NCBI RefSeq assembly: GCF_000143415.4
Contig: NW_003314262.1
Span: forward strand, 3,725,799 to 3,789,798
Length of the DNA stretch: 64,000 nucleotides
Direction: 5' to 3'
Source: Selaginella moellendorffii
Taxonomy: Eukaryota > Plantae > Lycopodiophyta
Under the pieces are notes generated by a model. The model was not told where the DNA came from, did not search any database, and was given only the letters and a program-made list of their open reading frames with translations. A program made the position numbers and the translations under genes. Every line of letters starts with the position of its first letter. Positions within the stretch are counted from its first letter, which is position 1. Below are positions 26,495-46,675 of the stretch, one piece after another.

Positions 26495-26808
26495 CGCTCG
26501 CTCGCCACACTCAAATCCGTGGCGTACCTGGACCGAAATCTCGTCACACAATCTAGAATCCACAAACGCGATCGCGGCGCACCTTCCATCCAGAGGGAGC
26601 GCACAAGCCAAGAGCGTGCGTGCCGCCACACAATTCTCCTGGCGCTTCCCCGGCAGCTTCTGCCGCCCCTAGGGTTCCTCTGTCCCACAAAGTTAATTCT
26701 TGAAGGGCCGTGTCCTTAGCGGAGCGTTTACATTGCCGTACACGTCAATGTCCTAGTCATACCAGTCAGCAGCCACGTAATTAAGCTTACCTAGTAGGAT
26801 AATGGCTT

Positions 26809-30332: not shown

Positions 30333-31377
30333 AGCATACCAGTGGTAGAAAGACGGCACCAGTGTCAAAGTCATAGCCATGGGCATCTCGTCGCTATATA
30401 CCTTGACGTAAGCATGCAGGAGGTGAGCCACGGTGACGGTGTCGTCATGGTGTGGAACGATTCGGTCCTCGGACACACCTTGTAGGTTCGTGCTCTGCAT
30501 CGCCGGGCAGCCTCTCAACTAGCACGGCCCCTTCGTCATGAACACGCGGGAGGATATAATAATAGAGGGGATCCGGGACTACAAAGGCTTTAGGATTGGA
30601 TTTAGAAGGCTGCTCAGTGCTCTTGCGTGTGATTGTTTTATAAACTTAAGTTTGAAACTAAAAGATTTGGTGCTTGTCGCAAGAGATTTCAATCGCTCAA
30701 GTAGGCGTGCAAGGATCTCGCAGTGAGGATGGACGCGCTGAAAGTGGTATCTTTAAATTCATCCATACTAGTTTCTTTTTTTCCTCTTTAGAATTGTTCT
30801 GTTCATTGCTAAATGTTTGATAAACCGACCCTTGCGGAAAAAAAATTCTGGCTGGGCATCAGGGCGAGAATGCTCTCAGAACCTTTCTTCGTCACGGAAG
30901 CAGCAAGCCACATTGTTGTGGCTTTATATTTCCTGCCAGCCTCGTCTAGAAATTAAGGTGACGGACTGCAGCTCTGAGGGGCTAATAAGACCTTCTTTCA
31001 CTTCGTTGCGTCTTTCTTTGCTCCAGATCAATCTCCTCCTGCACACACCAAACAATCACCACAAGAACTTCGAAGTATCAAAGACAGCGGATTGCCAGAA
31101 ACCAGACATCAAACAATTTTTACTAAAACCGTTCAGCCTGACAAGCCAGAAAATTTTAAACCATGGGTGATCTTGTTGGGATACCTTTCCTGGCCCGCTT
31201 TCTAAATCCTTGAAGAGCAGGAGCTTTAGGCTTCTCAGGCTGGACAAGGCACTAACGCACATACTTCTTCGTTCATCCTCCTCGCCTCAGTGGCTTTCGT
31301 TTCCTGTTGCACTGAGCCTTCGCCTTGGGAGGCCGAAGGACCACTTGGGCTTGATGATCGTTGAGCTCACGACAGTC

Positions 31378-32312
31378 TCTATCATTCGGTTGTATTCGTG
31401 CAATTCGGGCCACCTTGCGAGGCTGAGCAAACGGTGACGAAATGTTCTCGTCCTGAGCCTGATCGACTTGGGGCTGCTGCAGATGCTCAAGCTCTCCTTG
31501 GCACTGGAGTTTACAGTAAAGCGAGCTTTGTGCAGGACCCTCCTGCAGTGGCGGCAGACTACTGAGTCTGGTTGCACGGAGATACAAGATCGGGTTTCTG
31601 TTGATTCTAAATGTTTCCAACCCCAATGTATCGATGACCCGTTTCGCGTCGCATACCTTGATGGCCTGCGACTAAGATCTGCAAAGTGTTCATGTGGTTG
31701 CTTCCATGATCGTCTCTGCATTCTTGGCTGAGTGGCACCTTGCACTCGATGCAGAACAGGTTCTTCCTGGGTGTGGAACTGGAGTGGCGTTTGAGGATAA
31801 TTTAGGTAACCTGGGGCACGACTTCTTGGGCAGCCATGAATTTGCCGAGCATCGGCTATGGCAGCGCAGGAGTCCCCAGACTAGATGCTCACGAGGCGCC
31901 TCCCAATCAAGGACATCCTGGCGGCGGTCCACCCTGGAGGAGAGATTGATCCAAAGCTGGAGACCACGCTGTACACCAGTGCTATCGCAGTGCACAATGC
32001 CAGCAGCCATCCAATAGAAGAAACTATCATGATAAAGCAAGAAAGAAAATCAGAGAGATTTAGTAAACCCTTAAGTCAACCAGCTTGAATAGCTTGAGTT
32101 TGGAGCTGGGCGGGCTTGCGCTTGATGGAGGCATAGATCGCGACTGACCATTCTAGAACTGCCTTGGAGGCCGACCGGGCTTGCGCTTGGGAGGCATCAT
32201 TTCGCTGGCCCCTTGCGAGGTCGACCGTGCTGCGCTTGGGAGGCGTGGCCAATAAGAACGCTTATTGGAGAACGCCTCCAATAAGCAGCGAGAGAACGCT
32301 TTCCTGGCGGGA
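31378..32312 (+). repeat. Extra partial copy of the array-unit segment (also at 32968-33930, 38100-38980, 43190-44050)
   Basis: Near-identical sequence, with shared ORF translations HRLLSLARWPELHE and TGVQRGLQLWINLSS in all four copies. Confidence 0.9.
31935..32020 (-). pseudogene. Pirin exon fragment (further copies at about 33520-33605, 38675-38760, 43765-43850)
   Basis: WM(T)AG.GIVH...GVQRGLQLWINLSS matches the conserved plant pirin segment WMTAGRGIVHSE...GLQLWINL. Internally deleted, and no other pirin exons are seen. Confidence 0.75.
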
Positions 32313-34236
32313 ATAATCTTGCTGGAAAAATAACCCTAAACCCTGAGAAGCAATTAAGAAAATTAAGATACCTCCAAAGCTAATCCACTACTAGTTATGT
32401 GGACCAATATACCAAGCAAGAGAAATCAAAAACCCTAGCAAGGCAAAGAATGAGCGGGGATGATGCATATGGTGGCATGGAATGAGCGTGGGTGATGTAT
32501 GGCATCACCATGAGGGGCATTGATTAAAAAGAATATTCTACTTGGGACATTTAGTTCACACTTTGACCATTCACAAGATCGTCATATATCTTGCTTAGAT
32601 ATACCTTCCCTTTTGGGAGGTATACCTTTCCCCTAATACTTGCAATCACATATTGCTTGCCATACCAAATGACTAATATATTTTTATTACACAAATTTTT
32701 TTCAAATAAACTTTGTAGAACTTTAAAAGTTTATATAGAATAATTACATTAAATCAATTTTCATGTTTATTGCCGCTACCTATAATATAAATTTCTAAGC
32801 ATAGATCATATTCAATTTTGACAAAATTTTTTATGAATATCACCATCCACCACTATATAATAATACTAGAAATCTAAGAAATATTGTAACATTTAAGCTA
32901 AACATAGGTTACAATTAAGTAAATGCATTTGGCTAACTCCCGCTGATGCATTAAAATCTTAAAATCTTCTCTATCATTCGGTTGCATTCGTGCAATTCGG
33001 GCCACCTTGCGAGGCTGAGCAAACGGTGACGAAATGTTCTCGTCCTGAACCTGATCGACTTGGGGCTGCTGCAGATGCTCAAGCTCTCCTTGGCACTGGA
33101 GTTTACAGTAAAGCGAGCTTTGTGCAGGACCCTCCTGCAGTGGCGGCAGAGATACAAGATCGGGTTTCTGTTGATTCTAAATGTTTCCAACCCCTATGTA
33201 TCGATGACCCGTTTCGCATCGCACACCTTGATTGCCAAAAGGCGGCCTGCGACTAAGATCTGCAAAGTGTTCATGTGGTTGAAAGTTCCATGATCGTCTC
33301 TGCATTCTTGGCTGAGTGGCACCTTGCACTCGATGCAGAACAGGTTCTTCCTGGGTGTGGAACTGGAGTGGCGTTGAAGGATAATTTATGTAACCTGGGG
33401 CACGAGCTCTTGGGCAGCCATGAATTTGCCGAGCATCGGCTATGGCAGCGCAGGAGTCCCCAGACTAGATGCTCACGAGGCGCCTCCCAATCAAGGACAT
33501 CCTGGCGGCGCTCCATCCTGGAGGAGAGATTGATCCAAAGCTGGAGACCACGCTGTACACCAGTGCTATCGCAGTGCACAATGCCTCGCGCCAGCAGTCA
33601 TCCAATAGAAGAAACTATCGTGATAAAGCAAGAAAAGAAAATCAGAGAGATTTAGTAAACCTTTAAGTCAACCAGCTTAAATAGTGCCTGTCGACGAGTT
33701 TGGAGCTGGGCAGGCTTGCGCTTGATGGAGGCATAGATCGCGACTGACCATTCTGGAACTGCCTTGGAGGCCGACCGGGCTTGCGCTTGGGAGGGCATCA
33801 TTTCTGGAGCTGGCCCCTTGCGACGTCGACCGTGCTGCGCTTTGGAGGCGTGGCCTCGAGAGAAACCATCTGTGGCATCGTCGCTGCGAGAGATTTCTTG
33901 AGCAGCGGGAGACCGCTTTCCTGGCGGGAATCACGGCGCTTTCAAATACAAACGTGGAGGAATTTGACAAGAAATGCTTCTGACCGAAGCGGGCTTATGC
34001 ATGACTCACCGGAGCGATGGCGGGCAAAGAAGCGAGTGTGAGGGTTTCTTAGATTGAAGGATCGATAGAGAATCTGGAGTACGTGAATTTAGAGAATGCG
34101 CGCGCCAAGTCATTTGGTTTTCTTTTGGTCTATACCCCAGAATCGTCAACCCAGATGCCCACCAGGCGCCTCCCAATCAAGGTCATCCTGGCGGCGCTCC
34201 AGCGGCCCCCGGGCCTCGTCCGCGACGCTTTGAATT

Positions 34237-34301
34237 AAAGCTAAACAGGTATTAAACATTCGATACCCGTTCAAATCCGGTTGTGTTCAGATGCAAGTAT
34301 G
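34237..34301 (+). mobile_element. Isolated right end of the hAT element
   Basis: aaagctaaacaggtattaaacattcgatacccgttc...atgcaagtatg matches 29741-29814. Absent from the equivalent position in units 2 and 3. Confidence 0.85.
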
Positions 34302-34790
34302 CTCCACACCACGCTGCTCAACATGTGCGTGGCCAGGTTAAGGCCCAGAAGCTCTTCGACCAGACGCTCGAGCCCAACAACATCACCTTCTCGACCTACG
34401 GCCACTTTGGAATGGAGCATCGAACAGGACGGCTACAAGCCCGACAGTGTCACCTTCACGCACGTCCTCTACACTTGCAGCCATGGCGGCTTCGTGGACC
34501 TTACAGCGACGCTGGGAAGTGGGACATGGCCGCCAAGGTCCACAAGTTGACATCACCGTGACCAGGGAATAAAGAAGCCCGGCAGCAGGAGCTGGATCGA
34601 GATCAATGGCAAGATGAACGAGCTAATTGTAAGCTATTCCTGGCACCTGTAACTAGATCTACCAGAGAAGTGATGAAACAATACGTCTACATACCTGATA
34701 CAAAGAATAAGGCTGCATGACGCCGAAGAGGATGAGAAGCAAGACATTCTCTACTTCCATAGCTAGAAGCTGGCTATGGGGCAAACTCCT
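34302..34790 (+). pseudogene. PPR C-terminal (E/E+) fragment; copies at 39300-39880 and 44390-44920
   Basis: GYKPDSVTFTHVLYACSHGG, YSDAGKWDMAAKV and GIKKPGSRSWIEINGKMNE, with frameshifts and deletions. Confidence 0.75.
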
Positions 34791-34843
34791 CCAAAGGCGA
34801 CCATCAGATTGATTGTTATTATTTATGTGAGTAATTCTGTTAC

Positions 34844-35659
34844 TTAGCACTGATTATCATTTTTAATATAGTCCACCTCTCCAGAGAAGTAGCTGGCTAT
34901 GGTGTCCCACGGATTTGGAAGACTATCATTGGTCACATAAACCCAGCCCACATTCTGCTGGTACGCACGATCAATAACATCTCCATAGTCAAAGCTTGAC
35001 ACATTCACATCCGTGACATTGTAGAACAGGGCATAAAAGTTATACCTCGAATACTTGCTCGTCCAGGAACTCTGAGTCATAGACAGCCCACCAACACCGC
35101 TCTCAAAAATACAAATCACATCGGCTACCCGAGAACCATTATAGAAGAGGTATGTCTCCAGGGTTGGAGCTCCGGGATTATTAACCACTAGAGAGCTCGA
35201 ATTCTTGGACTTCACGTAGTTGTAGAGGCTTTGATAGTAAGGCTGCTTCCCGTCTGTGTTGGCAACTTCGTCGAAGAAAATTCCATTGATAGTTGGATAG
35301 AAGCGGTACCACGTATCGACGTCGTCTTGGACCAAATTGGAAGCTCTGTTGCTGTAATTAGTCGAGACATAGCCGATAACCAGGCCTGTTTGGCGCTGGA
35401 GGGCCGTAATAACATTCTGGTAGCTTGATTGAGCTGCAGAGCCTGGACCATTGGACGGATTTGCGATTGCTACGATCCGGTTTGGTAGCGTGGTGGCAGC
35501 AGAATTGAGAGAAGACCATGCCTGGGAATTTGAAGTAGGATCGAAGTAGGCTGGTACCATGATCCTCATTTTTTCACATCTTTGGGACCACACTAACTGG
35601 CATGCAAGGCTGAGCACCTGGAAGAACAAGAGAGCAAGAGAAAGCATTTTCCTATTCAT
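34844..35659 (-). CDS. Spherulin-4 / glycoside hydrolase family 135-like secreted protein, copy 1
   Basis: Intronless, 271 aa from ATG 35659 (the track start at 35683 is TTG). Signal peptide plus family motifs VPAYFDP, IANPSNGPG, VIGYVSTNY, GIFFDEV, VVNNPG, ADVICIFE and GWVYVTND..NPWD. Confidence 0.88.
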   Translation of the reverse strand: MNRKMLSLALLFFQVLSLACQLVWSQRCEKMRIMVPAYFDPTSNSQAWSSLNSAATTLPNRIVAIANPSNGPGSAAQSSYQNVITALQRQTGLVIGYVSTNYSNRASNLVQDDVDTWYRFYPTINGIFFDEVANTDGKQPYYQSLYNYVKSKNSSSLVVNNPGAPTLETYLFYNGSRVADVICIFESGVGGLSMTQSSWTSKYSRYNFYALFYNVTDVNVSSFDYGDVIDRAYQQNVGWVYVTNDSLPNPWDTIASYFSGEVDYIKNDNQC

Positions 35660-35843
35660 GATCTTCAGGTTTTTCCTGAACAATGAGCTTCAAGATCAGG
35701 GTAAGATGGCTTAAGAACTCGATACTGAGTAGTTTCAAGCAGGACAGCTGTCATTGAACTTATGGCTCAAGTTAAGTAAGATCAACGGCAACTTCTTAAG
35801 TCAAAGCTCGTTACGTAAGCAAGACCAAACTTCGCAGCGAACA

Positions 35844-36300
35844 TGATAGCTCGACGTACCAGCAGTTCATGCATTGCTAGCAAAACACAATAAAAACACC
35901 ATAGAGAGAAAAGGAAATGCATCACCTTGCCAGTAGCTCAACTACAGATGGATCAAAGCCCATACTAAAAGAATTCTCCGGAACATAGCCTGGCAGCCGG
36001 AACCTTGAAGAAAACTACGGTACAACCGAGAAAGATCCTTCAGCGTTTCTGATTCTCCATCTTGAGGGCTGGTGCTCTCCTATTCTCCACCGCGGCGGCA
36101 GCCTCGTTGGTGGCATCGCTCGCTCGCCACAATCAAATTCACGGTGATGAGATTTGGTTGCCAGGTACGCCGTCAGATAATCTTGAATCCACAAATGCGA
36201 TTGCGGCATACCTTCCATCCAGAGGGAAGCTTCCCTGGTCCCACAAATTTGGGTCCCACAAATGGCTCAATGTCCTAGTCATAGGCGTCAGCCGCCATGT
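35844..36300 (-). pseudogene. Deleted copy of the TBC gene 5' region (upstream DNA, exon 1, exon 3, intron 3); copies at 40934-41400 and partially 45974-46133
   Basis: gatggatcaaagcccatactaaaagaattctccggaacatagcctggcagcc is identical to 25702-25753. The segment 36047-36300 matches 26420-26780. Confidence 0.9.
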
Positions 36301-39300
36301 CAGATCCTCATTAGAAAAGTTGACAAGCCTTTTCTTCAATATTGAAAATATAATTGTCTTTAAGCAGGGGCACCAAAAATCAAGAGTGCAAAGTGTGTAA
36401 ACAGTTTATGAATAAATGAAGATCCAAGATTTCCCCTTGTTCTCCAGGTAAGCCAGATTTTCTTTTCTTTCTATTCGTTCTTATTGAGTTTTTCAATTAA
36501 TTCTAGCAATATCTTCTCTGGAAGGTTTTTCTCCTCCAAATCAAAATCTAAATGGTAAAGCTTCATGTTTTGCAAATAGAGCTAGAAAACAATAGCAATG
36601 CATCAGCCTTCATGGTTTCAGGCTTTGTTGGACATCAAGAACATCCCTGCAAGGTGCCATTCAGCCAAGAATGCAGAGATGATCAAGGGACTTGCAACCA
36701 CACAAACACTTTGCAGATCTCTGTCCTAGGCCACTTTTCCACACTCAAAGTGTGCAATGTGAAGTGGCTCATCGATACATCACATTTATCATCAATAATA
36801 ACCTAATCTTGTATTTCCATGCCAGTTCTAGTGCCAAGGAGAGTTTGTTGGTTGCATTATAGCATGATTTCTTCTTGGCAAGACACTCCCTTACTAGACA
36901 TATAATTATCTTATTTTCATTGAATAGATCTTGACATGATAAATGTAGATAATTGCCATGGCAATAGAAAAAAATTGATTGTTGTCCCCTTTTTTATTCT
37001 GTCCTAGTGAATTTAATTTTTTTCTGGCAGTCCCTGGCCATAAAACAATTATAAGTAAATATGCAACTAAATATGAAACTAAATGTCCAAATTATGTAAA
37101 TATAATATGCAACTAACTTATGAAGAATCTAAAGTTATTTTAGCATCTAAAAAACAAACGGATAAAAAACTTTAAGTTCTAACTTAATATCCCAATATAA
37201 AAATCTTAATGTTCACATATTTAGCACAGATATTGATTTTAGGTTTAGGGCTGTGCCGTGGGCTATACCTTTTAGAAGGATTCAGACAGATAGTTTAGAT
37301 GAGGTGGCATGCCACGTGGCATACATTTTCTACAATATGCAGCCCATGTGGCACACTTTATGTACTCAAAACATGCCACGTGGCAAACCCTTACCTTTGG
37401 ATGCCACGTTGCCACATTATCCTTGCTAGGGTTTTTGATTTCTCTTGCCTGGATTAGGTTGCTGAGCACCATGAGCAAGCCTTTGCTAAGGTATACTGGC
37501 TAGTAGTGGATTAGCTTTGGAGGTATCTTAATTTTCTTAATTGCTTCTCAGCGTTTAGGGTTTAAGGTTTAAGCTCGGGATGATGCATATGATGGCATGG
37601 AATGAGCAGGGGGTGAACCATGAGGAGTTTAGGTGGGAACCCTAAATGCTAAATTGCAAGATGGTGAGCATGCGTCTTTAAACAATTGAAGTAGATGTGT
37701 TTTAAATGCATATATCTTGCCTAGTTATATCTTCTCTTTTGGGAGGTATACCTTTCCTCTAATACCTGCAATCACATATTGCTTGCCAAATATATTTTCA
37801 TTACACACGTAAAACTTTATAAGTTTATATAGAATAATTAGTTTAGATCACATTAAATCACATAATCTATTTTCATGTTTATTGCCGCTACCTATAATAT
37901 AAATTTCTAAGCATAGATCATATTCAATTTTGACAAATTTTTATGAATATCACCATCCACCACTATATAATAATACTAGAAATCTAAGAAATAATGACCT
38001 GTGCCGATTTAGTTTGGTTGTAACATTTAAGCTAAACATAGGTTACAATTAAGTAAATGCATTTGCCTAACTCCCGCTGATGCATTAAAATCTTAAAATC
38101 TTCTCTATCATTCGGTTGCATTCGTGCAATTCGGGCCACCTTGCGAGGCTGAGCAAACGGTGACGAAATGTTCTCGTCCTGAGCCTGATCGACTTGGGGC
38201 TGCTGCAGATGCTCAAGCTCTCCTTGGCACTGGAGTTTACAGTAAAGCGAGCTTTGTGCAGGACCCTCCTGCAGTGGCGGCTACTGAGTTTGGTTGCACG
38301 GAGATACAAGATCGGGTTTCTGTTGATTCTAAATGTCTCCAACCCCTATGTATCGATGACCCGTTTCGCATCGCATACCTTGATTGCCAAAAGGCGGCCT
38401 GCGACTAAGATCTGCAAAGTGTTCATGTGGTTGCAAGTTCCATGATCGTCTCTGCATTCTTGGCTGAGTGGCACCTTTCACTCGATGCAGAACAGGTTCT
38501 TCCTGGGTGTGGAACTGGAGTGGCGTTGGAGGATAATTTAGGTAACCTGGGGCACGACTTCTTGGGCAGCCATGAATTTGCCGAGCATCGGCTATGGCAG
38601 CGCGAGGAGTCCCCAGACTAGATGCTCACGAGGCGCCTCCCAATCAAGGACATCCTGGCGGCGGTCCACCCTGGAGGAGAGATTGATCCAAAGCTGGAGA
38701 CCACGCTGTACACCAGTGCTATCGCAGTGCACAATGCCTCGCGCCAGCAGTCATCCAATAGAAGAAACTATCGTGATAAAGCAAGAAAAGAAAATCAGAG
38801 AGATTTAGCAAACCTTTAAGTCAACCAGCTTAAATAGTGCCTGTAGCTGGGCGGGCTTGCGCTTGATGGAGGCATAGATCGCGACTGACCATTCTGGAAC
38901 TGCCTTGGAGGCCGACCGGGCTTGCGCTTGGGAGGCATCATTTCTGGAGCTGGCCCCTTGCGAATTCCTGGCGGGAATCACGGCGCTTTGAAATAAAACC
39001 CTGGAGGAACTTCATTTGCATGAATCACCGGAGCGATGGCGCGTAAAGAAGCGATGGTGAGGGTTTCTCAGAGTGAAGGATCGATAAAGAGTCTGGACGC
39101 GCTGCAAGCTATTTGGTTTTCTTTTGGTCTATAAGCGAGAAAGAGTTCCAAAGATGGAGGATAATTTAGGTACCTGGGGCACGAGTTCTCGTCGTGGGAG
39201 CCGAGCATCTGCTATGGCAGCGCAGGACTCCCCAGAATCGTCAACCAAGAATCGTCACCAGGCGCCTCCCAATCAAGGTCATCGTGGCGGCGCTCCAGCG

Positions 39301-39934
39301 GCCCCCGGGCCTCGTCCGCGAGGCGGTGGAGCTTTTCTTCCGCCGAGCTCTCCCAGAAGCCCGCCAGCTCCATGCGACGTCGTGCTCCACACCACGCTGC
39401 TCAACATGTACGTGGCCGGGTTAAGGCCCAGAAGCTCTTCGACCAGACGCTCGAGCCCAACAACATCACCTTCTCGGCCTACGCTAGAAACGGCCACTTT
39501 GGCATGGAGCATCGAACAGGACGGCTACAAGCCCGACAGCGTCACCTTCACGCACGTCCTCTACGCTTGCAGCCATGGCGGCTTCGTGGACCTTACAGCG
39601 ACGCTGGGAAGTGGAACATGGCCGCCAAGGTCCACAAGTTGATATCAGCGTGACCGGGGAATAAAGAAGCCCGGCAGCAGGAGCTGGATCGAGATCAATG
39701 GCAAGATGAACGAGCTAATCGTAAGCTATTCCTGGCACCTGTAACTAGATCTACCAGAGAAGTGATGAAACAATACGTCTACATACCTGATACAAAGAAA
39801 AGGCTGCATGACGCCGAAGAGGATGAGAAGCAAGATATTCTCTACTTGCATAGCTAGAAGCTGGCCATGGGGCAAACTCCTCCAAAGGCGACCATCAGAT
39901 TGATTGTTATTATTTATGTGAGTAATTCTGTTAC

Positions 39935-40750
39935 TTAGCACTGATTATCATTTTTAATATAGTCCACCTCTCCAGAGAAGTAGCTGGCTATGGTGTCCCA
40001 CGGATTTGGAAGACTATCATTGGTCACATAAACCCAGCCCACATTCTGCTGGTAAGCACGATCAATAACATCTCCATAGTCAAAGCTTGACACATTCACA
40101 TCCGTGACATTGTAGAACAGGGCATAAAAGTTATACCTCGAATACTTGCTCGTCCAGGAACTCTGAGTCATAGACAGCCCACCAACACCGCTCTCAAAAA
40201 TACAAATCACATCGGCTACCCGAGAACCATTATAGAAGAGGTATGTCTCCAGGGTTGGAGCTCCGGGATTATTAACCACTAGAGAGCTCGAATTCTTGGA
40301 CTTCACGTAGTTGTAGAGGCTTTGATAGTAAGGCTGCTTCCCGTCTGTGTTGGCAACTTCGTCGAAGAAAATTCCATTGATAGTTGGATAGAAGCGGTAC
40401 CACGTATCGACGTCGTCTTGGACCAAATTGGAAGCTCTGTTGCTGTAATTAGTCGAGACATAGCCGATAACCAGGCCTGTTTGGCGCTGGAGGGCCGTAA
40501 TAACATTCTGGTAGCTTGATTGAGCTGCAGAGCCTGGACCATTGGACGGATTTGCGATTGCTACGATCCGGTTTGGTAGCGTGGTGGCAGCAGAATTGAG
40601 AGAAGACCATGCCTGGGAATTTGAAGAAGGATCGAAGTAGGCCGGTACCATGATCCTCATTTTTTCACATCTTTGGGACCACACTAACTGGCATGCAAGG
40701 CTGAGCACCTGGAAGAACAAGAGAGCAAGAGAAAGCATTTTCCTATTCAT
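39935..40750 (-). CDS. Spherulin-4 / GH135-like secreted protein, copy 2
   Basis: Same motifs as copy 1; one amino-acid difference (DPT to DPS) plus silent changes. Confidence 0.88.
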   Translation of the reverse strand: MNRKMLSLALLFFQVLSLACQLVWSQRCEKMRIMVPAYFDPSSNSQAWSSLNSAATTLPNRIVAIANPSNGPGSAAQSSYQNVITALQRQTGLVIGYVSTNYSNRASNLVQDDVDTWYRFYPTINGIFFDEVANTDGKQPYYQSLYNYVKSKNSSSLVVNNPGAPTLETYLFYNGSRVADVICIFESGVGGLSMTQSSWTSKYSRYNFYALFYNVTDVNVSSFDYGDVIDRAYQQNVGWVYVTNDSLPNPWDTIASYFSGEVDYIKNDNQC

Positions 40751-43700
40751 GATCTTCAGGTTTTTCCTGAACAATGAGCTTCAAGATCAGGGTAAGATGG
40801 CTTAAGAACTCGATACTGAGTAGTTTCAAGCAGGACAGCTGTCATTGAACTTATGGCTCAAGTTAAGTAAGATCAACGGCAACTTCTTAAGTCAAAGCTC
40901 GTTATGTAACCAAGACCAAACTTCGCAGCGAACATGATAGCTACACAACATCGACGTACCAGCAGTTCATGCATTGCTAGCAAAACACAATAAAAACACC
41001 ATAGAGAGAAAAGGAAATGCATCACCTTGCCAGTAGCTCAACTACAGATGGATCAAAGCCCATACTAAAAGAATTCTCCGGAACATAGCCTGGCAGCCGG
41101 AACCTTGAAGAAAACTACGGTACAACCGAGAAAGATCCTTCAGCGTTTCTGATTCTCCATCTTGAGGGCTGGTGCTCTCCTATTCTCCACCGCGGCGGCA
41201 GCCTCGTTGGTGGCATCGCTCGCTCGCCACAATCAAATTCACGGTGATGAGATTTGGTTGCCAGGTACGCCGTCAGATAATCTTGAATCCACAAATGCGA
41301 TTGCGGCATACCTTCCATCCAGAGGGAAGCTTCCCTGGTCCCACAAATTTGGGTCCCACAAATGGCTCAATGTCCTAGTCATAGGCGTCAGCCGCCATGT
41401 CAGATCCTCATTAGAAAAGTTGACAAGCCTTTTCTTCAATATTGAAAATATAATTGTCTTTAAGCAGGGGCACCAAAGATCAAGAGTGCAAAGTGTGTAA
41501 ACAGTTTATGAATAAATGAAGATCCAAGATTTCTCCAGGTAAGCCAGATTTTCTTTTCTTTCTATTCGTTCTTATTGAGTTTTTCAATTAATTCTAGCAA
41601 TATCTTCTCTGGAAGGTTTTTCTCCTCCGAATCAAAATCTAAATGGTAAAGCTTCATGTTTTGCAAATAGAGCTAGAAAACAATAGCAATGCATCAGCCG
41701 TCATGGTTTCAGGCTTTGTTGGACATCAAGAACATCCCTAGGTGTTGTTCTGCATTGAGTGCAAGGTGCCATTCAGCCAAGAATGCAGAGATGATCAAGG
41801 GACTTGCAACCACACAAACACTTTGCAGATCTCTGTCCTAGGCCACTTTTCCACACTCAAAGTGTGCAATGTGAAGTGGCTCATCGATACATCACATTTA
41901 TCATCAATCTTGTATTTCCATGCCAGTCTAGTGCCAAGGAGAGTTTGTTGGTTGCATTATAGCATGATTTCTTCTTGGCAAGACACTCCCTTACTAGACA
42001 TATAATTATCTTATTTTCATTGAATAGATCTTGACATGATAAATGTAGATAATTGCCATGGCAATAGAAAAAAATTGATTGTTGTCCCCTTTTTTATTCT
42101 GTCCTAGTGAATTTAATTTTTTTCTGGCAGTCCCTGGCCATAAAACAATTATAAGTAAATATGCAACTAAATATGAAACTAAATGTCCAAATTATGCAAC
42201 TAAATGCCCATATAGCTTTTGTCTTTCTTATATTTTAGCATCTAAAAAACAAACGGATAAAAAACTTTAAGTTCTAACTTAATATCCCAATATAAAAAAC
42301 TTAATGTTCACATATTTAGCACAGATATTGTTTAGGTTTAGGGCTTGTGCCGTGGGCTATACCTTTTAGAAGGATTCAGACAGATAGTTTAGATGAGGTG
42401 GCATGCCACGTGGCATACATTTTCTACAATATGCAGCCCATGTGGCACACTTTATGTACTCAAAACATACCACGTGGCAAACCCTTACTTTTGGATGCCA
42501 CGTTGGCATCTTGGAGCTTAAACCTTAAACCCTAAACGCTGAGAAGCAATTAAGAAAATTAAGATACCTCCAAAGCTAATCCACTACTAGTTATGTGGAC
42601 CAGTATACCTTAGCAAAGGCTTGCTCATGGTGCTCAGCAACCTAATCCAGGCAAGAGAAATCAAAAACCCTAGCAAGGATAATGTGGCAAAGAATGAGCG
42701 GGGATGATGCATATGATGGCATGGAATGAGCAGGGGGTGAACCATGAGGAGTTTAGGTGGGAACCCTAAATGCTAAATTGCAAGATGGTGAGCATGCGTC
42801 TTTAAACAATTGAAGTAGATGTGTTTTAAATGCATATATCTTGCCTAGTTATACCTTCTCTTTTGGGAGGTATACCTTTCCTCTACCAAATATATTTTCA
42901 TTACACACGTAGAACTTTATAAGTTTATATAGAATAATTAGTTTTGATCACATTAAATCACATAATCTATTTTCATGTTTATTGCCGCTACCTATAATAT
43001 AAATTTCTAAGCATAGATCATATTCAATTTTGACATTTTTTTATCAATATCACCATCCACCACTATATAATAATACTAGAAATCTAAGAAATAATGACCT
43101 GTGTTTGGTTGTAATATTTAAGCTAAACATAGGTTACAATTAAGTAAATGCATTTGCCTAACTCCCGCTGATGCATTAAAATCTTAAAATCTTCTCTATC
43201 ATTCGGTTGCATTCGTGCAATTCGGGCCACCTTGCGAGGCTGAGCAAACGGTGACGAAATGTTCTCGTCCTGAGTCTGATCGACTTGGGGCTGCTGCAGA
43301 TGCTCAAGCTCTCCTTGGCACTGGAGTTTACAGTAAAGCGAGCTTTGTGCAGGACCCTCCTGCAGTGGCGGCTACTGAGTTTGGTTGCACGGAGATACAA
43401 GATCGGGTTTCTGTTGATTCTAAATGTCTCCAACCCCTATGTATCGATGACCCGTTTCGCATCGCATACCTTGATTGCCAAAAGGCGGCCTGCGACTAAG
43501 ATCTGCAAAGTGTTCATGTGGTTGCAAGTTCCATGATCGTCTCTGCATTCTTGGCTGAGTGGCACCTTTCACTCGATGCAGAACAGGTTCTTCCTGGGTG
43601 TGGAACTGGAGTGGCGTTGGAGGATAATTTAGGTAACCTGGGGCACGAGTTCTTGGGCAGCCATGAATTTGCCGAGCATCGGCTATGGCAGCGCAGGAGT

Positions 43701-44984
43701 CCCCAGTCTAGATGCTCACGAGGCGCCTCCCAATCAAGGACATCCTGGCGGCGGTCCACCCTGGAGGAGAGATTGATCCAAAGCTGGAGACCACGCTGAA
43801 CACCAGTGCTATCGCAGTGCACAATGCCTCGCGCCAGCAGTCATCCAATAGAAGAAACTATCGTGATAAAGCAAGAAAAGAAAATCAGAGAGATTTAGTA
43901 AACCTTTAAGTCAACCAGCTTAAATAGTGGCTTGCGCTTGATGGAGGCATAGATCGCGACTGACCATTCTGGAACTGCCTTGGAGGCCGACCGGGCTTGC
44001 GCTTGGGAGGCATCATTTCTGGAGCTGGCCCCTTGCGAATTCCTGGCGGGAATCACGGCGCTTTGAAATAAAACCCTGGAGGAACTTGACATGGGGCATT
44101 TGCATGAATCACCGGAGCGATGGCGCGTAAAGAAGCGATGGTGAGGGTTTCTCAGAGTGAAGGATCGATAAAGAGTCTGGACGCGCTGCAAGCTATTTGG
44201 TTTTCTTTTGGTCTATAAGCGAGAAAGAGTTTCAAAGATGGAGGATAATTTAGGTACCTGGGGCACGAGTTCTCGTCGTGGGAGCCGAGCATCTGCTATG
44301 GCAGCGCAGGACTCCCCAGAATCGTCAACCAAGAATCGTCACCAGGCGCCTCCCAATCAAGGTCATCCTGGCGGCGCTCCAGCGGCCCCCGGGCCTCGTC
44401 CGCGAGGCGGTGGAGCTTTTCTTCCACCGCTGCGCCGCCGAGCTCTCCCAGAAGCCCGCCAGCTCCATGCGACGTCGTGCTCCACACCACGCTGGCTGCT
44501 CAACATGTACGTGGCCGGGTTAAGGCCCAGAAGCTCTTCGACCAGACGCTCGAGCCCAACAACATCACCTTCTCGGCCTACGCTAGAAACGGCCACTTTG
44601 GCATGGAGCATCGAACAGGACGGCTACAAGCCCGACAGCGTCACCTTCACGCACGTCCTCTACGCTTGCAGCCATGGCGGCTTCGTGGACCTTACAGCGA
44701 CGCTGGGAAGTGGAACATGGCCGCCAAGGTCCACAAGTTGATATAAGCGTGACCGGGGAATAAAGAAGCCCGGCAGCAGGAGCTGGATCGAGATCAATGG
44801 CAAGATGAACGAGTTCATCGTAAACGATTCCTGGCACACGTACCTCGCCCAGATCCGCTAGAGAAGTGATGAAACAATAGCAAGATATTCTCTACTTCCA
44901 TAGCTAGAAGCTGGCCATGGGGCAAACTCCTCCAAAGGCGACCATCAGATTGATTGTTATTATTTATGTGAGTAATTCTGTTAC

Positions 44985-45800
44985 TTAGCACTGATTATCA
45001 TTTTTAATATAGTCCACCTCTCCAGAGAAGTAGCTGGCTATGGTGTCCCACGGATTTGGAAGACTATCATTGGTCACATAAACCCAGCCCACATTCTGCT
45101 GGTAAGCACGATCAATAACATCTCCATAGTCAAAGCTTGACACATTCACATCCGTGACATTGTAGAACAGGGCATAAAAGTTATACCTCGAATAATTGCT
45201 CGTCCAGGAACTCTGAGTCATAGACAGCCCACCAACACCGCTCTCAAAAATACAAATCACATCGGCTACCCGAGAACCATTATAGAAGAGGTATGTCTCC
45301 AGGGTTGGAGCTCCGGGATTATTAACCACTAGAGAGCTCGAATTCTTGGACTTCACGTAGTTGTAGAGGCTTTGATAGTAAGGCTGCTTCCCGTCTGTGT
45401 TGGCAACTTCGTCGAAGAAAATTCCATTGATAGTTGGATAGAAGCGGTACCACGTATCGACGTCGTCTTGGACCAAATTGGAAGCTCTGTTGCTGTAATT
45501 AGTCGAGACATAGCCGATAACCAGGCCTGTTTGGCGCTGGAGGGCCGTAATAACATTCTGGTAGCTTGATTGAGCTGCAGAGCCTGGACCATTGGACGGA
45601 TTTGCGATTGCTACGATCCGGTTTGGTAGCGTGGTGGCAGCAGAATTGAGAGAAGACCATGCCTGGGAATTTGAAGAAGGATCGAAGTAGGCCGGTACCA
45701 TGATCCTCATTTGTTCACAGCTTTGGGACCACACTAACTGGCATGCAAGGCTGAGCACCTGAAAGAACAAGAGAGCAAGAGAAAGCATTTTCCTATTCAT
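44985..45800 (-). CDS. Spherulin-4 / GH135-like secreted protein, copy 3
   Basis: Same motifs; differs from copy 2 at QRCEK to QSCEQ and SKY to SNY. Confidence 0.88.
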   Translation of the reverse strand: MNRKMLSLALLFFQVLSLACQLVWSQSCEQMRIMVPAYFDPSSNSQAWSSLNSAATTLPNRIVAIANPSNGPGSAAQSSYQNVITALQRQTGLVIGYVSTNYSNRASNLVQDDVDTWYRFYPTINGIFFDEVANTDGKQPYYQSLYNYVKSKNSSSLVVNNPGAPTLETYLFYNGSRVADVICIFESGVGGLSMTQSSWTSNYSRYNFYALFYNVTDVNVSSFDYGDVIDRAYQQNVGWVYVTNDSLPNPWDTIASYFSGEVDYIKNDNQC

Positions 45801-46675
45801 GATCTTCAGGATTTTCCTGAACAATGAGCTTCAAGATCAGGGTAAGATGGCTTAAGAACTCGACCACGAACTTACTGAGTAGTTTCAAGCAGGACAGCTG
45901 TCATTGAACGTATGGCTCAAGTTACGTAAGATCAACGGCAACTTTTAAGTCAGCGCTCGTTACGTAAAACCTCGTGATAGCTACACAACACGACGTAAGG
46001 AAATGGGCCAGCAGTTACTAAAAGAATTCTCCGGAACATAGCCTGGCCGCCAGAACCTTAAAAAAAACTACCATTCTCCGGGTATACCGAGAAAGATCAT
46101 TGTCGATCACATGCTCAATCTCAGCGTTTCTGGTATTCACAATGGAAAATGGTGCTTGAGAGAAAGCAAACCTTGATAGTTAAAAGCTTGGTTTATGGAA
46201 AATGGTGCATGAAATTCCCTGAAAGAAAGCAAGACTTATCTTGGTTTCAAAGAGATTGCCCGTCCTTGGTTCTGAAAGAGATTGGCTGAAGAATAGCTTG
46301 GTTTTGAGACTAACACCTTGGGAGATGATGAATCAAAGGCAGTTGAAACAGGTCGAGATAATTTGGATGAACCGCTTCAGAGTTGTATGGAAGCTCCAGA
46401 GTTGACAACAGAGTGCCAATTAGATCAAAAGCCTTTAATGGTGGTGTTCAAAGTGTCGCGAAGGTGATGTTACTGAGAAGAATAATGTGGTCTTGGGTTC
46501 GATCATATGCGGCGCCAAAGGAATAATTCCATTTGCCAAAATTATCCAGCTAGCATATTCCTTCCCAGCGGGCAATGCGCTAAAATATAGGGCACCCCGC
46601 GCCCGAGGGTTTCCCACACTGTGCCCTTTCTTTCTCTCTTCTGCCTATCGCCGCCTTTCGATCTTCTTCGCAAGG

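What the first reader, a model, noticed from the sequence alone, without database searches (positions are those of the whole stretch)
34844..45800. Triplicated, intronless, secreted spherulin-4/GH135-like glycosidase in a land plant: candidate horizontally acquired anti-biofilm or antifungal system
Seen: three near-identical 271-aa ORFs with a signal peptide and the spherulin-4 motif series, including FFDE and IFE. They lack introns, unlike the neighbouring non-PPR genes. Each is embedded in clearly plant-derived DNA, so contamination is unlikely. Established: GH135 (Aspergillus Sph3; Pfam Spherulin4) is a mainly fungal, bacterial and slime-mould family that cleaves alpha-1,4-GalNAc polymers such as galactosaminogalactan, which plants are not known to make. 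Inference: the gene came from a microbe by horizontal transfer and was amplified for dosage as an apoplastic enzyme against microbial exopolysaccharide or biofilm.
Basis: partly seen in the sequence, partly recalled or inferred. Interest (0 to 1): 0.88.

Follow-up and report, generated by a model that had tools for sequence, protein, structure and literature searches.

The report
Bacteria-derived GH135 glycosidase array in Selaginella
A spikemoss (Selaginella) carries three tandem, intron-free, transcribed copies of a probably secreted sugar-cleaving enzyme that came from bacteria, apparently before lycophytes and ferns diverged, and that only those two groups have kept; its likely target, a GalNAc-rich microbial slime polymer, is untested.

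Summary
Three intact 271-aa ORFs lie on the minus strand (34844-35659, 39935-40750, 44985-45800) in a ~5.1-kb tandem repeat. Each matches Pfam Spherulin4 (the Pfam family of Sph3, founder of GH135) at E~5e-47. An AlphaFold model (pLDDT 93) resembles Aspergillus Sph3 far more than any other solved structure, and the acidic residues D130, E131 and E186 are kept. The DNA is Selaginella nuclear DNA, with PPR, RabGAP, CHCH and TruD neighbours and 97.6% flank identity to an S. moellendorffii v1 scaffold. That scaffold has two copies where this window has three.

Contigs from four studies cover only the ORF plus short UTRs and show no splice joints. More than one copy is transcribed.

Selaginella and ferns (Adiantum, Ceratopteris, Pteridium) form one clade (support 100/99). 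The clade shares an insertion and single-exon genes, splits into lycophyte and fern sides, and nests within bacteria next to Dermatophilaceae-MAG sequences. Liverworts hold a separately acquired clade (AU p=0.00016).

The anti-biofilm or antifungal role is plausible but untested. I found no paper describing this, although databases already label the gene "spherulin-4". Two earlier unchecked scan notes report similar genes elsewhere in this genome.

The parts
34844..35659 (-). Spherulin4/GH135 gene copy 1, a single-exon CDS of 271 aa
   Evidence: ORF. Pfam PF12138 E 7.3e-47. Differs from copy 2 by S42T.
39935..40750 (-). Spherulin4/GH135 gene copy 2, a single-exon CDS of 271 aa; reference copy for all analyses
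   Evidence: AlphaFold2 model has pLDDT 93.2. Best PDB match is Sph3, TM 0.72-0.77.
44985..45800 (-). Spherulin4/GH135 gene copy 3, a single-exon CDS of 271 aa
   Evidence: Differs from copy 2 by R27S, K30Q and K202N. Its diagnostic 3'UTR and ORF variants appear in the abundant contig of run X2.
39887..40767 (-). Minimum transcript extent of copy 2: ORF plus about 48 nt of 3'UTR and at least 17 nt of 5'UTR, unspliced
   Evidence: contigs of 827-876 nt from runs X1, X6 and X15 span 39887-40767 with no joints. The X2 contig extends the 3' end to 39546. The rest of the unit has depth near 0.
40676..40750 (-). Codons for the N-terminal signal-peptide-like segment (residues 1-25)
   Evidence: Hydropathy and n/h/c layout. 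In the model it is a low-confidence helix (residues 4-20, pLDDT 67-74) outside the barrel. All plant-clade members have an equivalent segment. Cleavage and secretion are inferred.
40358..40363 (-). Codons for D130 and E131 (the FFDE motif), equivalent to Sph3 Asp-166 and Glu-167
   Evidence: Translation. HMMER alignment to 5c5g/5d6t. D130 is invariant in 98/98 homologues and E131 is kept in 86/98. Sph3 residues are taken from PMC10485009.
40193..40195 (-). Codon for E186 (the IFES motif), the probable equivalent of Sph3 Glu-222
   Evidence: Translation. Conserved in 97/98 homologues. Lies at the C-terminal end of predicted strand 181-187. The equivalence to Glu-222 is inferred, because the pairwise alignment stops just before it.
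32583..37411 (.). Tandem repeat unit 1 (contains copy 1; its left part is more diverged, about 91%)
   Evidence: blastn self-comparison
37577..42505 (.). Tandem repeat unit 2 (contains copy 2)
42701..45967 (.). Tandem repeat unit 3 (truncated; ends about 170 bp upstream of copy 3, followed by the unique flank with the CHCH gene)
   Evidence: Flank synteny with GL377581.1.
31376..32218 (.). Extra partial copy of the unit's non-genic part (corresponds to 38102-38963, 94% identical)

Best explanation
These are three recent tandem paralogues of a Spherulin4/GH135-family glycoside hydrolase gene in Selaginella nuclear DNA.

Shown:
- The gene belongs to a clade found only in lycophytes and ferns.
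- That clade is nested within bacterial Spherulin4 proteins.
- The gene is single-exon.
- Its composition matches that of host genes.
- It is transcribed from more than one copy.

Inferred for origin: one bacterium-to-plant transfer happened before lycophytes and ferns diverged. The gene was then inherited vertically and lost in seed plants. Unequal crossing-over of a ~5.1-kb unit later produced two or three copies, depending on the haplotype or assembly.

Inferred for mechanism: the N-terminal signal-like segment directs the protein into the secretory pathway. The mature (beta/alpha)8 barrel probably acts, like Sph3, as a retaining endo-alpha-1,4-N-acetylgalactosaminidase, using D130 and E186 with E131 adjacent.

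Most likely biological role: degrading GalNAc/GalN-rich microbial exopolysaccharides outside the plant cell, such as fungal galactosaminogalactan or bacterial Pel-like polymers. That would make it functionally analogous to plant chitinases and beta-1,3-glucanases.
For: Family:
- Pfam PF12138 at E~5e-47, matched end to end.
- The AlphaFold2 model has pLDDT 93.2 and pTM 0.88, with eight strand-helix repeats.
- Foldseek's top PDB hits are Sph3 5d6t and 5c5g, at E 1e-14 and TM 0.72-0.77. The next hits are generic TIM-barrel glycosidases at E around 1e-6 and TM 0.5 or below.
- FFD130E131 aligns with Sph3 Asp-166 and Glu-167.
- D130 is conserved in 98/98 homologues and E186 in 97/98.

Host integration:
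- Plant genes lie on both sides.
- The same locus with CHCH and TruD neighbours is present in GL377581.1 at 97.6% identity.
- The fern orthologues lie on 137-Mb and 200-Mb chromosomes.
- Gene GC3 is 0.53, against 0.52-0.55 for neighbouring host ORFs.

Origin:
- The careful maximum-likelihood tree gives the vascular-plant clade 100/99, the lycophyte side 98/84 and the fern side 100/95. The clade is sister to the Dermatophilaceae sequences at 100/99 and nested among Planctomycetota, the FCB group and Verrucomicrobiota (quick tree).
- A 5-6-residue insertion (DVNVxxFDYGD) is present in all 17 plant-clade members and in no bacterium.
- Forcing all plants into one clade is rejected (delta lnL 107, p-AU 0.00016).
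- No seed-plant, moss, hornwort or algal protein appears among the named hits.

Expression:
- Contigs from four studies cover only the ORF plus UTRs, at depth 33-1138, and show no joints.
- Paralogue-specific variants appear in those contigs.

Degradative, secreted role in the donors:
- The closest bacterial genes carry signal peptides or T9SS tails.
- They sit beside TonB receptors, ABC sugar transporters and other glycosidases, not in exopolysaccharide-synthesis clusters.
Against: - No enzyme of this bacterial or plant subclade has been characterised, and identity to Sph3 is only 22-23%. Substrate specificity is therefore extrapolated.
- The E186-to-Glu-222 equivalence rests on conservation and strand position, not on a residue-level structural superposition.
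- The RNA status of the runs is the tool's guess. I infer it from small contig totals and gene-only coverage.
- Secretion is predicted from sequence only. Sph3 itself is membrane-anchored by an N-terminal helix, so a signal anchor cannot be excluded.
- The paralogues differ at too few sites for dN/dS to show selection.
- The Dermatophilaceae sister gene lies in a GC trough and looks foreign in that bacterium, so the donor phylum is not established.
- The absence from seed plants rests on named database hits, not on a genome-by-genome search.
- The four unnamed sequences on the lycophyte side have no taxonomic label.
Confidence: 0.72

Rival explanations
1. One reading: a recent, lineage-specific transfer from a microbe (possibly fungal or slime-mould) into this one land plant, followed by amplification for dosage.
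For: The copies are 98-99.6% identical and lack introns. The family is mostly microbial, with 4,299 representatives.
Against: Fern orthologues at 58-69% identity share the same insertion and single-exon structure. The gene tree splits into lycophyte and fern sides. Composition is fully host-like. Fungal Sph3 is very distant.
Confidence: 0.04
2. The origin is bacterial, but lycophytes and ferns did not inherit the gene from a common ancestor. Either two parallel acquisitions came from closely related donors, or the gene moved plant-to-plant between ferns and lycophytes.
For: The gene is absent from seed plants among named hits, which requires a loss under vertical descent. Within ferns the gene tree does not perfectly follow the taxonomy: Ceratopteris falls outside Pteridium plus Adiantum, support 91/91. 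Fern-related plant-to-plant transfers are known (neochrome; from my own knowledge).
Against: The shared insertion is absent from every sampled bacterium. The plant clade is monophyletic at 100/99 with a clean lycophyte/fern bipartition. Parallel acquisition would require the insertion to arise twice or to exist in an unsampled donor.
Confidence: 0.15
3. The enzyme acts on an endogenous lycophyte or fern glycan, in wall or glycoprotein remodelling or in a developmental or desiccation programme as in Physarum spherulation, and not on microbial polymers.
For: Fungal Sph3 and Physarum spherulin-4 act in the producer's own wall or matrix biology (Physarum from my own knowledge). Expression in unchallenged material appears high in run X2, although contig depths are a poor measure and no sample metadata are available.
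Against: No glycosyltransferase, deacetylase or epimerase partner lies near the gene. Plants are not known to make alpha-1,4-GalNAc polymers (established knowledge). The nearest bacterial relatives sit in catabolic, uptake-linked loci.
Confidence: 0.22
4. Contamination or assembly artefact: bacterial DNA mis-assembled into a plant scaffold, or a collapsed or expanded repeat.
For: Copy number differs between assemblies, three against two. Long-read confirmation could not be run.
Against: Plant genes flank the array on both sides. An independent scaffold shows the same locus. Composition is host-like. Transcripts carry paralogue-specific variants. Orthologues lie on fern chromosomes.
Confidence: 0.01
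5. Ancient vertical inheritance from the eukaryotic ancestor, with massive loss, rather than horizontal transfer.
For: Spherulin4 also occurs in fungi, Amoebozoa and liverworts.
Against: The vascular-plant and liverwort clades are each closer to different prokaryotic groups than to each other, and a single plant clade is rejected. Identity is 58% to a bacterial protein against 22-23% to fungal Sph3.
Confidence: 0.02

Closest known systems
Aspergillus Sph3 (CAZy GH135; PDB 5C5G, 5D6T)
   Same: Same Pfam family and the same (beta/alpha)8 fold (TM 0.72-0.77). The Asp-Glu pair of the FFDE motif is conserved, as is the later Glu. Both have an N-terminal hydrophobic segment.
   Different: Identity is only 22-23%. 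Sph3 is membrane-anchored, lies in a five-gene galactosaminogalactan synthesis cluster and is needed for synthesis. The plant gene stands alone among unrelated plant genes, is of bacterial descent, and has a short signal-peptide-like N-terminus.
Bacterial Spherulin4 proteins of Dermatophilaceae MAGs and of the FCB group (Bacteroidota, Ignavibacteriota, Kryptoniota)
   Same: The closest relatives, at 58% and 46-52% identity. Same domain length and catalytic residues, and also secreted (signal peptide or T9SS tail).
   Different: They lack the plant-specific 5-6-residue insertion. They sit in sugar-uptake or polysaccharide-utilisation neighbourhoods. Many carry extra domains. None has been characterised biochemically.
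Liverwort Spherulin4 genes (Marchantia polymorpha Mp1g23210 and Mp2g01560, M. paleacea, Riccia fluitans)
   Same: Also land-plant nuclear Spherulin4 genes with signal-like N-termini. Riccia also has two genes on one contig with consecutive locus tags.
   Different: Only about 34% identical. They fall in a different bacterial/archaeal part of the tree (100/100), and a common plant origin is rejected (p-AU 0.00016). They have NWG in place of NPG and no insertion.
Physarum polycephalum spherulin 4 (the family's namesake)
   Same: Same Pfam family by name. Associated with encystment walls rich in galactosamine polymer (from my own knowledge).
   Different: No Physarum sequence was available here for comparison. 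Its role is developmental, in the producer's own wall.
Other endo-alpha-1,4-galactosaminidases: PelA hydrolase domain (GH166), Ega3 (GH114), GH191
   Same: A TIM barrel with an Asp/Glu catalytic pair, acting on GalNAc/GalN exopolysaccharides. They can disrupt biofilms when added from outside.
   Different: Different CAZy families. They prefer deacetylated polymer. No Pfam hit to them here.
Plant pathogenesis-related hydrolases (chitinases GH18/19, beta-1,3-glucanases GH17) and horizontally acquired defence genes of ferns such as Tma12
   Same: This is the proposed mode of action: a secreted plant enzyme attacking a polymer that only microbes make. Tandem gene amplification is typical of such genes. 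Tma12 is a precedent for a bacterial gene retained in ferns (from my own knowledge).
   Different: No sequence or fold relationship. Induction by pathogens and antimicrobial activity were not tested for the Selaginella gene.

Membership tests
Pfam PF12138 Spherulin4 / CAZy GH135 | Sequence match to the family profile above the curated threshold, over the full domain | tested here: met
   160-161 bits against a 30.2-bit cut-off, profile positions 1-238 of 239, for all three copies. All 40 best ESM Atlas feature hits are Spherulin4.
Pfam PF12138 Spherulin4 / CAZy GH135 | (beta/alpha)8 barrel fold like Sph3 | tested here: met
   The model has pLDDT 93.2. Foldseek's top hits are 5d6t and 5c5g, at E 1e-14 and TM 0.72-0.77, eight orders of magnitude ahead of the next hit. 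The structure is predicted, not solved.
Pfam PF12138 Spherulin4 / CAZy GH135 | Acidic pair equivalent to Sph3 Asp-166/Glu-167 | tested here: met
   One search aligns GIFFDE of the query (D130, E131) with GIFFDE of Sph3 (chain residues 116 and 117, offset 50). D130 is kept in 98/98 and E131 in 86/98 homologues.
Pfam PF12138 Spherulin4 / CAZy GH135 | Glutamate equivalent to Sph3 Glu-222 | tested here: inconclusive
   E186 (IFES) is conserved in 97/98 homologues and ends predicted strand 181-187. The pairwise alignment to Sph3 stops at query residue 176, and no residue-level superposition was available.
Pfam PF12138 Spherulin4 / CAZy GH135 | Retaining endo-alpha-1,4-N-acetylgalactosaminidase activity | not testable with these tools
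   Needs recombinant enzyme and substrate.
Pfam PF12138 Spherulin4 / CAZy GH135 | Assignment by CAZy's own model (dbCAN GH135 HMM) | not testable with these tools
   No dbCAN library is on hand. Pfam PF12138 is the family to which Sph3, the GH135 founder, belongs.
Horizontally acquired gene in a plant nuclear genome | Recipient clade nested within donor-domain sequences with strong support | tested here: met
   plant clade 100/99, sister to bacterial sequences at 100/99, inside bacterial clades. The AU test rejects plant monophyly with the liverwort genes.
Horizontally acquired gene in a plant nuclear genome | Physical linkage to bona fide host genes, in independent assemblies | tested here: met
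Horizontally acquired gene in a plant nuclear genome | Patchy distribution: absent from the other major plant lineages | tested here: inconclusive
   The only named plant hits are Selaginella, Adiantum, Ceratopteris and Pteridium, plus the separate liverwort clade. No genome-by-genome tblastn of seed plants, mosses, hornworts or algae was possible.
Horizontally acquired gene in a plant nuclear genome | Expressed and maintained intact | tested here: met
   Gene-only contigs in four studies. Intact ORFs in three window copies and two v1 copies and in ferns.
Plant pathogenesis-related secreted hydrolase (functional class) | Secretion to the apoplast | not testable with these tools
   Only a signal-peptide-like N-terminus and six N-x-S/T sequons were seen.
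Plant pathogenesis-related secreted hydrolase (functional class) | Induction by microbes and antimicrobial or anti-biofilm effect | not tested
   Run metadata are coded, and there was no challenge experiment to compare.

The most novel reading that the evidence does not exclude
Lycophytes and ferns possess a class of apoplastic defence hydrolase that seed plants lack. It would be a bacterium-derived GH135 endo-alpha-1,4-N-acetylgalactosaminidase that degrades fungal galactosaminogalactan and bacterial Pel-type biofilm matrix, and perhaps releases GalNAc oligomers as danger signals. Liverworts would have recruited the same enzyme family independently from a different prokaryotic donor, a convergent capture of one microbial weapon by two land-plant lineages.
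Probability: 0.3. Interest if true: 0.75.

Novelty: new member of a known kind. Interest (0 to 1): 0.52.

Why it matters
Horizontally acquired microbial glycosidases in early-diverging land plants are a known phenomenon. GH135/Spherulin4 has not, as far as the searchable literature shows, been described in plants. Its only characterised substrates are polymers that plants do not make but that many plant-associated fungi and bacteria use for adhesion and biofilms.

This case is clean: a synapomorphic insertion, a species-tree-like split, and expression. It adds a datable example of a bacterial gene retained in lycophytes and ferns and lost in seed plants. It also adds a second, independent capture of the same family in liverworts.

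If the enzyme does cut galactosaminogalactan or Pel, it would be a new kind of plant anti-microbial hydrolase. It would also be a ready source of eukaryote-expressible biofilm-degrading enzymes.

The analysis shows too that the public S. moellendorffii gene models for this locus are probably wrong at their 5' ends.

Tried and rejected
1. Fungal or slime-mould donor: rejected on scores and structure identity. No fungal or Physarum sequence could be placed in the tree, because none was returned as a usable protein id and I did not type sequences from memory.
2. dN/dS among the paralogues and haplotype copies: there are only 1-15 differences per pair and ratios range from 0.14 to 0.85, so the test has no power. 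Selaginella-fern comparisons are saturated at silent sites and were not attempted.
3. Literature: seven searches found no paper on plant Spherulin4/GH135. Bamford 2015 (PMC4645995) and the Ma et al. 2022 HGT catalogue (Mol Plant) are not held. The Marchantia pangenome paper has no held supplements. A listing in a supplementary HGT table cannot be excluded.
4. Identifying the four unnamed lycophyte-side sequences (P0003, P0005, P0006, P0010): cluster look-up gave no names. P0005's contig has AT-rich, ORF-free flanks, so it is eukaryote-like. The taxon remains unknown.
5. Naming Dermatophilaceae as the donor: weakened by the GC trough around that gene.
7. ESM Atlas look-up added only family confirmation.


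Full report
**Observation.** The region holds three intact minus-strand ORFs at 34844-35659, 39935-40750 and 44985-45800. Each is 271 aa from the ATG and 279 aa from an upstream TTG. The copies differ from one another at one to four residues. Each matches Pfam PF12138 (Spherulin4) at E 5e-47 to 7e-47, about 160 bits against a curated cut-off of 30.2, over profile positions 1-238 of 239.

The ORFs lie in a tandem repeat with 5.05-5.10 kb spacing. A self-comparison resolves the following:
- three units, at 32583-37411, 37577-42505 and 42701-45967, the last truncated just upstream of copy 3;
- an extra partial copy at 31376-32218;
- a small inverted segment, 37409-37576 against 42514-42690;
- a fragment upstream of the gene (40959-41327 in unit 2) that resembles DNA at 25614-26598, next to the RabGAP gene.

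**Host and context.** The best protein hits are two S. moellendorffii proteins at 97% identity. The public v1 scaffold GL377581.1 is collinear with the window's right flank at 97.6% identity. It carries the same neighbours, a CHCH-domain gene and TruD. It has two Spherulin4 copies where the window has three.

The window also encodes an intronless 578-aa PPR protein and RabGAP-TBC, saccharopine-dehydrogenase and TruD exons. The DNA is therefore Selaginella nuclear DNA, either the other haplotype or a very close accession. Contamination is excluded. The gene's GC (0.46) and GC3 (0.53) match neighbouring host ORFs at 0.52-0.55.

**Expression and gene structure.** I laid contigs of four runs from four studies on one repeat unit, 38000-42900 (4,901 letters).
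- In every run a contig of 827-896 nt covers 39887-40767. That is the ORF plus about 48 nt downstream and at least 17 nt upstream. One run extends the 3' end to 39546.
- Depths are 33 to about 1,100. The other ~4 kb of the unit is essentially uncovered.
- No joints fall in the ORF.

The tool only guesses that these runs are RNA. Gene-only coverage, together with whole-run contig totals of 20-40 Mb, is what transcriptomes give and DNA libraries do not. I take this as good, indirect evidence of an unspliced mRNA of about 0.9 kb.

Variant positions in the contigs coincide with sites that distinguish copy 3, copy 2 and the two v1 alleles. More than one copy is therefore transcribed.

The public gene models do not fit these transcripts. 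Two of them (325 and 284 aa) splice a foreign N-terminus into the signal-peptide region, and a third is a 655-aa fusion.

**What the protein is.** An AlphaFold2 model built on a 98-sequence alignment has mean pLDDT 93.2 and pTM 0.88. It shows eight strand-helix repeats preceded by a low-confidence N-terminal helix, residues 4-20. Foldseek against the PDB ranks the two Aspergillus clavatus Sph3 entries first, at E 1e-14 and TM 0.72-0.77 with 22-23% identity. The next hits are unrelated TIM-barrel glycosidases at E around 1e-6.

Sph3 founded CAZy GH135. [quoted passage not shown]
- HMMER aligns the query's GIFFD130E131 with Sph3's GIFFDE, chain residues 116 and 117 at an offset of 50.
- Across 98 homologues, D130 is invariant, E131 is kept in 86 and E186 in 97.
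- E186 ends predicted strand 181-187 and is the likely Glu-222 equivalent. I could not superpose residues, so this last equivalence is inferred.

The N-terminus is signal-peptide-like, with MNRK, a 15-residue hydrophobic core and then small residues. The mature part has six N-x-S/T sequons. Secretion is inferred, not shown.

**Origin.** The family is very large and overwhelmingly prokaryotic, with 4,299 representatives at E<=1e-3. The close relatives of the Selaginella protein fall into these groups:
- Ferns at 58-69% identity: Adiantum capillus-veneris, A. nelumboides, Ceratopteris richardii and Pteridium aquilinum.
- Several unnamed transcriptome- or metagenome-derived sequences.
- A cluster that includes a Dermatophilaceae MAG protein at 58%. 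Its contig is plainly bacterial, with ABC sugar transporters, DeoR regulators and GH4.
- T9SS-tagged proteins of Bacteroidota, Ignavibacteriota and Kryptoniota at 46-52%, sitting next to TonB-dependent receptors and other glycosidases.
- Planctomycetota and Verrucomicrobiota at about 40%.

A 64-row maximum-likelihood tree (LG+C20+F+G4 PMSF; UFBoot/SH-aLRT support) gives these results (the 116-row quick tree agrees):
- a vascular-plant clade at 100/99;
- within it, a lycophyte-side group (Selaginella plus four unnamed sequences) at 98/84 and a fern group at 100/95;
- the Dermatophilaceae sequences as sister, at 100/99;
- the whole nested among Planctomycetota, FCB-group and Verrucomicrobiota sequences.

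All 17 plant-clade members carry a 5-6-residue insertion (DVNVxxFDYGD), and no bacterial sequence does. The two fern genes I could inspect are single-exon. They lie on chromosomes of 137 Mb and 200 Mb.

The simplest reading is one bacterial-to-plant transfer before lycophytes and ferns diverged, followed by vertical descent and loss in seed plants. Parallel or plant-to-plant transfers are less likely but not excluded.

The donor phylum is uncertain. The Dermatophilaceae gene sits in a GC trough (53-57% against 62-68%) with long non-coding gaps on both sides, so it looks foreign there too.

**A second plant lineage.** Riccia fluitans (two genes on one contig, consecutive locus tags), Marchantia polymorpha (Mp1g23210, Mp2g01560) and M. 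paleacea have Spherulin4 genes that are 64-69% identical to each other. They are only about 34% identical to the Selaginella and fern clade. They form a 100/100 clade in a different, well-supported part of the tree, alongside unnamed metagenomic, Woesearchaeota, Streptomyces and cyanobacterial sequences. Forcing all plant sequences into one clade costs 107 log-likelihood units and is rejected (p-AU 0.00016). Land plants therefore acquired this family at least twice.

**How it most likely works.**

Shown:
- family membership;
- the predicted fold;
- conserved acidic residues;
- bacterial ancestry;
- transcription.

Inferred:
- The protein enters the secretory pathway and its signal peptide is cleaved.
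- It then hydrolyses alpha-1,4-linked GalNAc-rich polymers by a retaining mechanism, as Sph3 does.

No polysaccharide-synthesis genes accompany it. Its nearest bacterial relatives look like secreted catabolic enzymes. Plants are not known to make such polymers. The most likely substrates are therefore microbial exopolysaccharides, namely fungal galactosaminogalactan and bacterial Pel-like matrix.

That role is analogous to plant chitinases and beta-1,3-glucanases. Recent copy-number change would fit such a role but does not prove it. The main rival is an endogenous developmental or wall-remodelling function. I put the defence reading at roughly one in three and the endogenous reading at roughly one in five, and neither was tested.

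**Novelty.** Public databases already auto-label the S. moellendorffii protein 'spherulin-4'. HGT-derived microbial hydrolases in non-seed plants are a familiar category. Searches of the held literature found nothing on Spherulin4 or GH135 in plants. The main HGT catalogue could not be consulted. I class the finding as a new member of a known kind. It is solid and moderately interesting, with a testable functional hypothesis.

Two earlier first-reader notes of this scan (s1-361266, s1-402794) report similar genes on other pieces of the same genome. I did not check them.

Noticed in passing
P0097, P0284-P0287 (Riccia fluitans, Marchantia polymorpha Mp1g23210 and Mp2g01560, M. paleacea): Liverworts carry a separate Spherulin4 clade, about 34% identical to the Selaginella and fern clade, that nests with different prokaryotes. 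A common plant origin is rejected (p-AU 0.00016). This is a second, independent acquisition of the same family.
   Followed up: partly
L005:7600-9000 (Dermatophilaceae MAG DATCNE010000343.1): The closest bacterial relative of the plant clade lies in a GC trough (53-57% against 62-68%) between unusually long non-coding gaps. It looks recently acquired in that bacterium, so the true donor lineage is probably unsampled.
   Followed up: partly
L001:10001-11207 and L001:14709-18041 (S. moellendorffii v1 GL377581.1); P0001, P0002: The public gene models look mis-annotated. The 325-aa and 284-aa models replace part of the signal peptide with a spliced upstream exon, and the 655-aa model fuses the second copy to downstream sequence. 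Transcript contigs support the plain unspliced 271-aa ORF.
   Followed up: partly
window 31376-45967 compared with L001: Copy number differs: three gene copies in the window and two on the 97.6%-identical public scaffold. This is either a haplotype polymorphism or a collapse in the older assembly.
   Followed up: partly
P0003, P0005, P0006 (unnamed lycophyte-side subclade; L008): These sequences have FFDQ instead of FFDE, so Gln replaces the residue equivalent to Sph3 Glu-167, while D130 and E186 are kept. P0005's contig has AT-rich, ORF-free flanks, so it is eukaryotic. The organism is unknown.
   Followed up: no
window 39124-39642 and 44208-44741 (+): Each repeat unit carries a 172-177-aa ORF with PPR-like remnants (no Pfam hit at E 0.01). 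Contigs of about 1.5 kb in runs X1 and X2 match only 39390-39587 and run on into unlike sequence, which suggests an expressed relative elsewhere in the genome.
   Followed up: no
window 40959-41327 compared with 25614-26598: The region just upstream of the Spherulin4 gene in unit 2 is 76-90% similar to DNA next to the RabGAP-TBC gene 15 kb away. The promoter-proximal part of the unit may therefore derive from a local segmental duplication.
   Followed up: no
window 37409-37576 compared with 42514-42690: A short segment of about 170 bp at the unit junctions is present in inverted orientation (95% identity).
   Followed up: no
L002 (Bacteroidetes MAG JAKAKL010000050.1): This bacterial locus has two T9SS-tagged Spherulin4 genes flanking a TonB-dependent receptor, next to an amidohydrolase and a Melibiase/GHL10-like protein. 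It is a candidate utilisation locus for a GalNAc-type polysaccharide.
   Followed up: no
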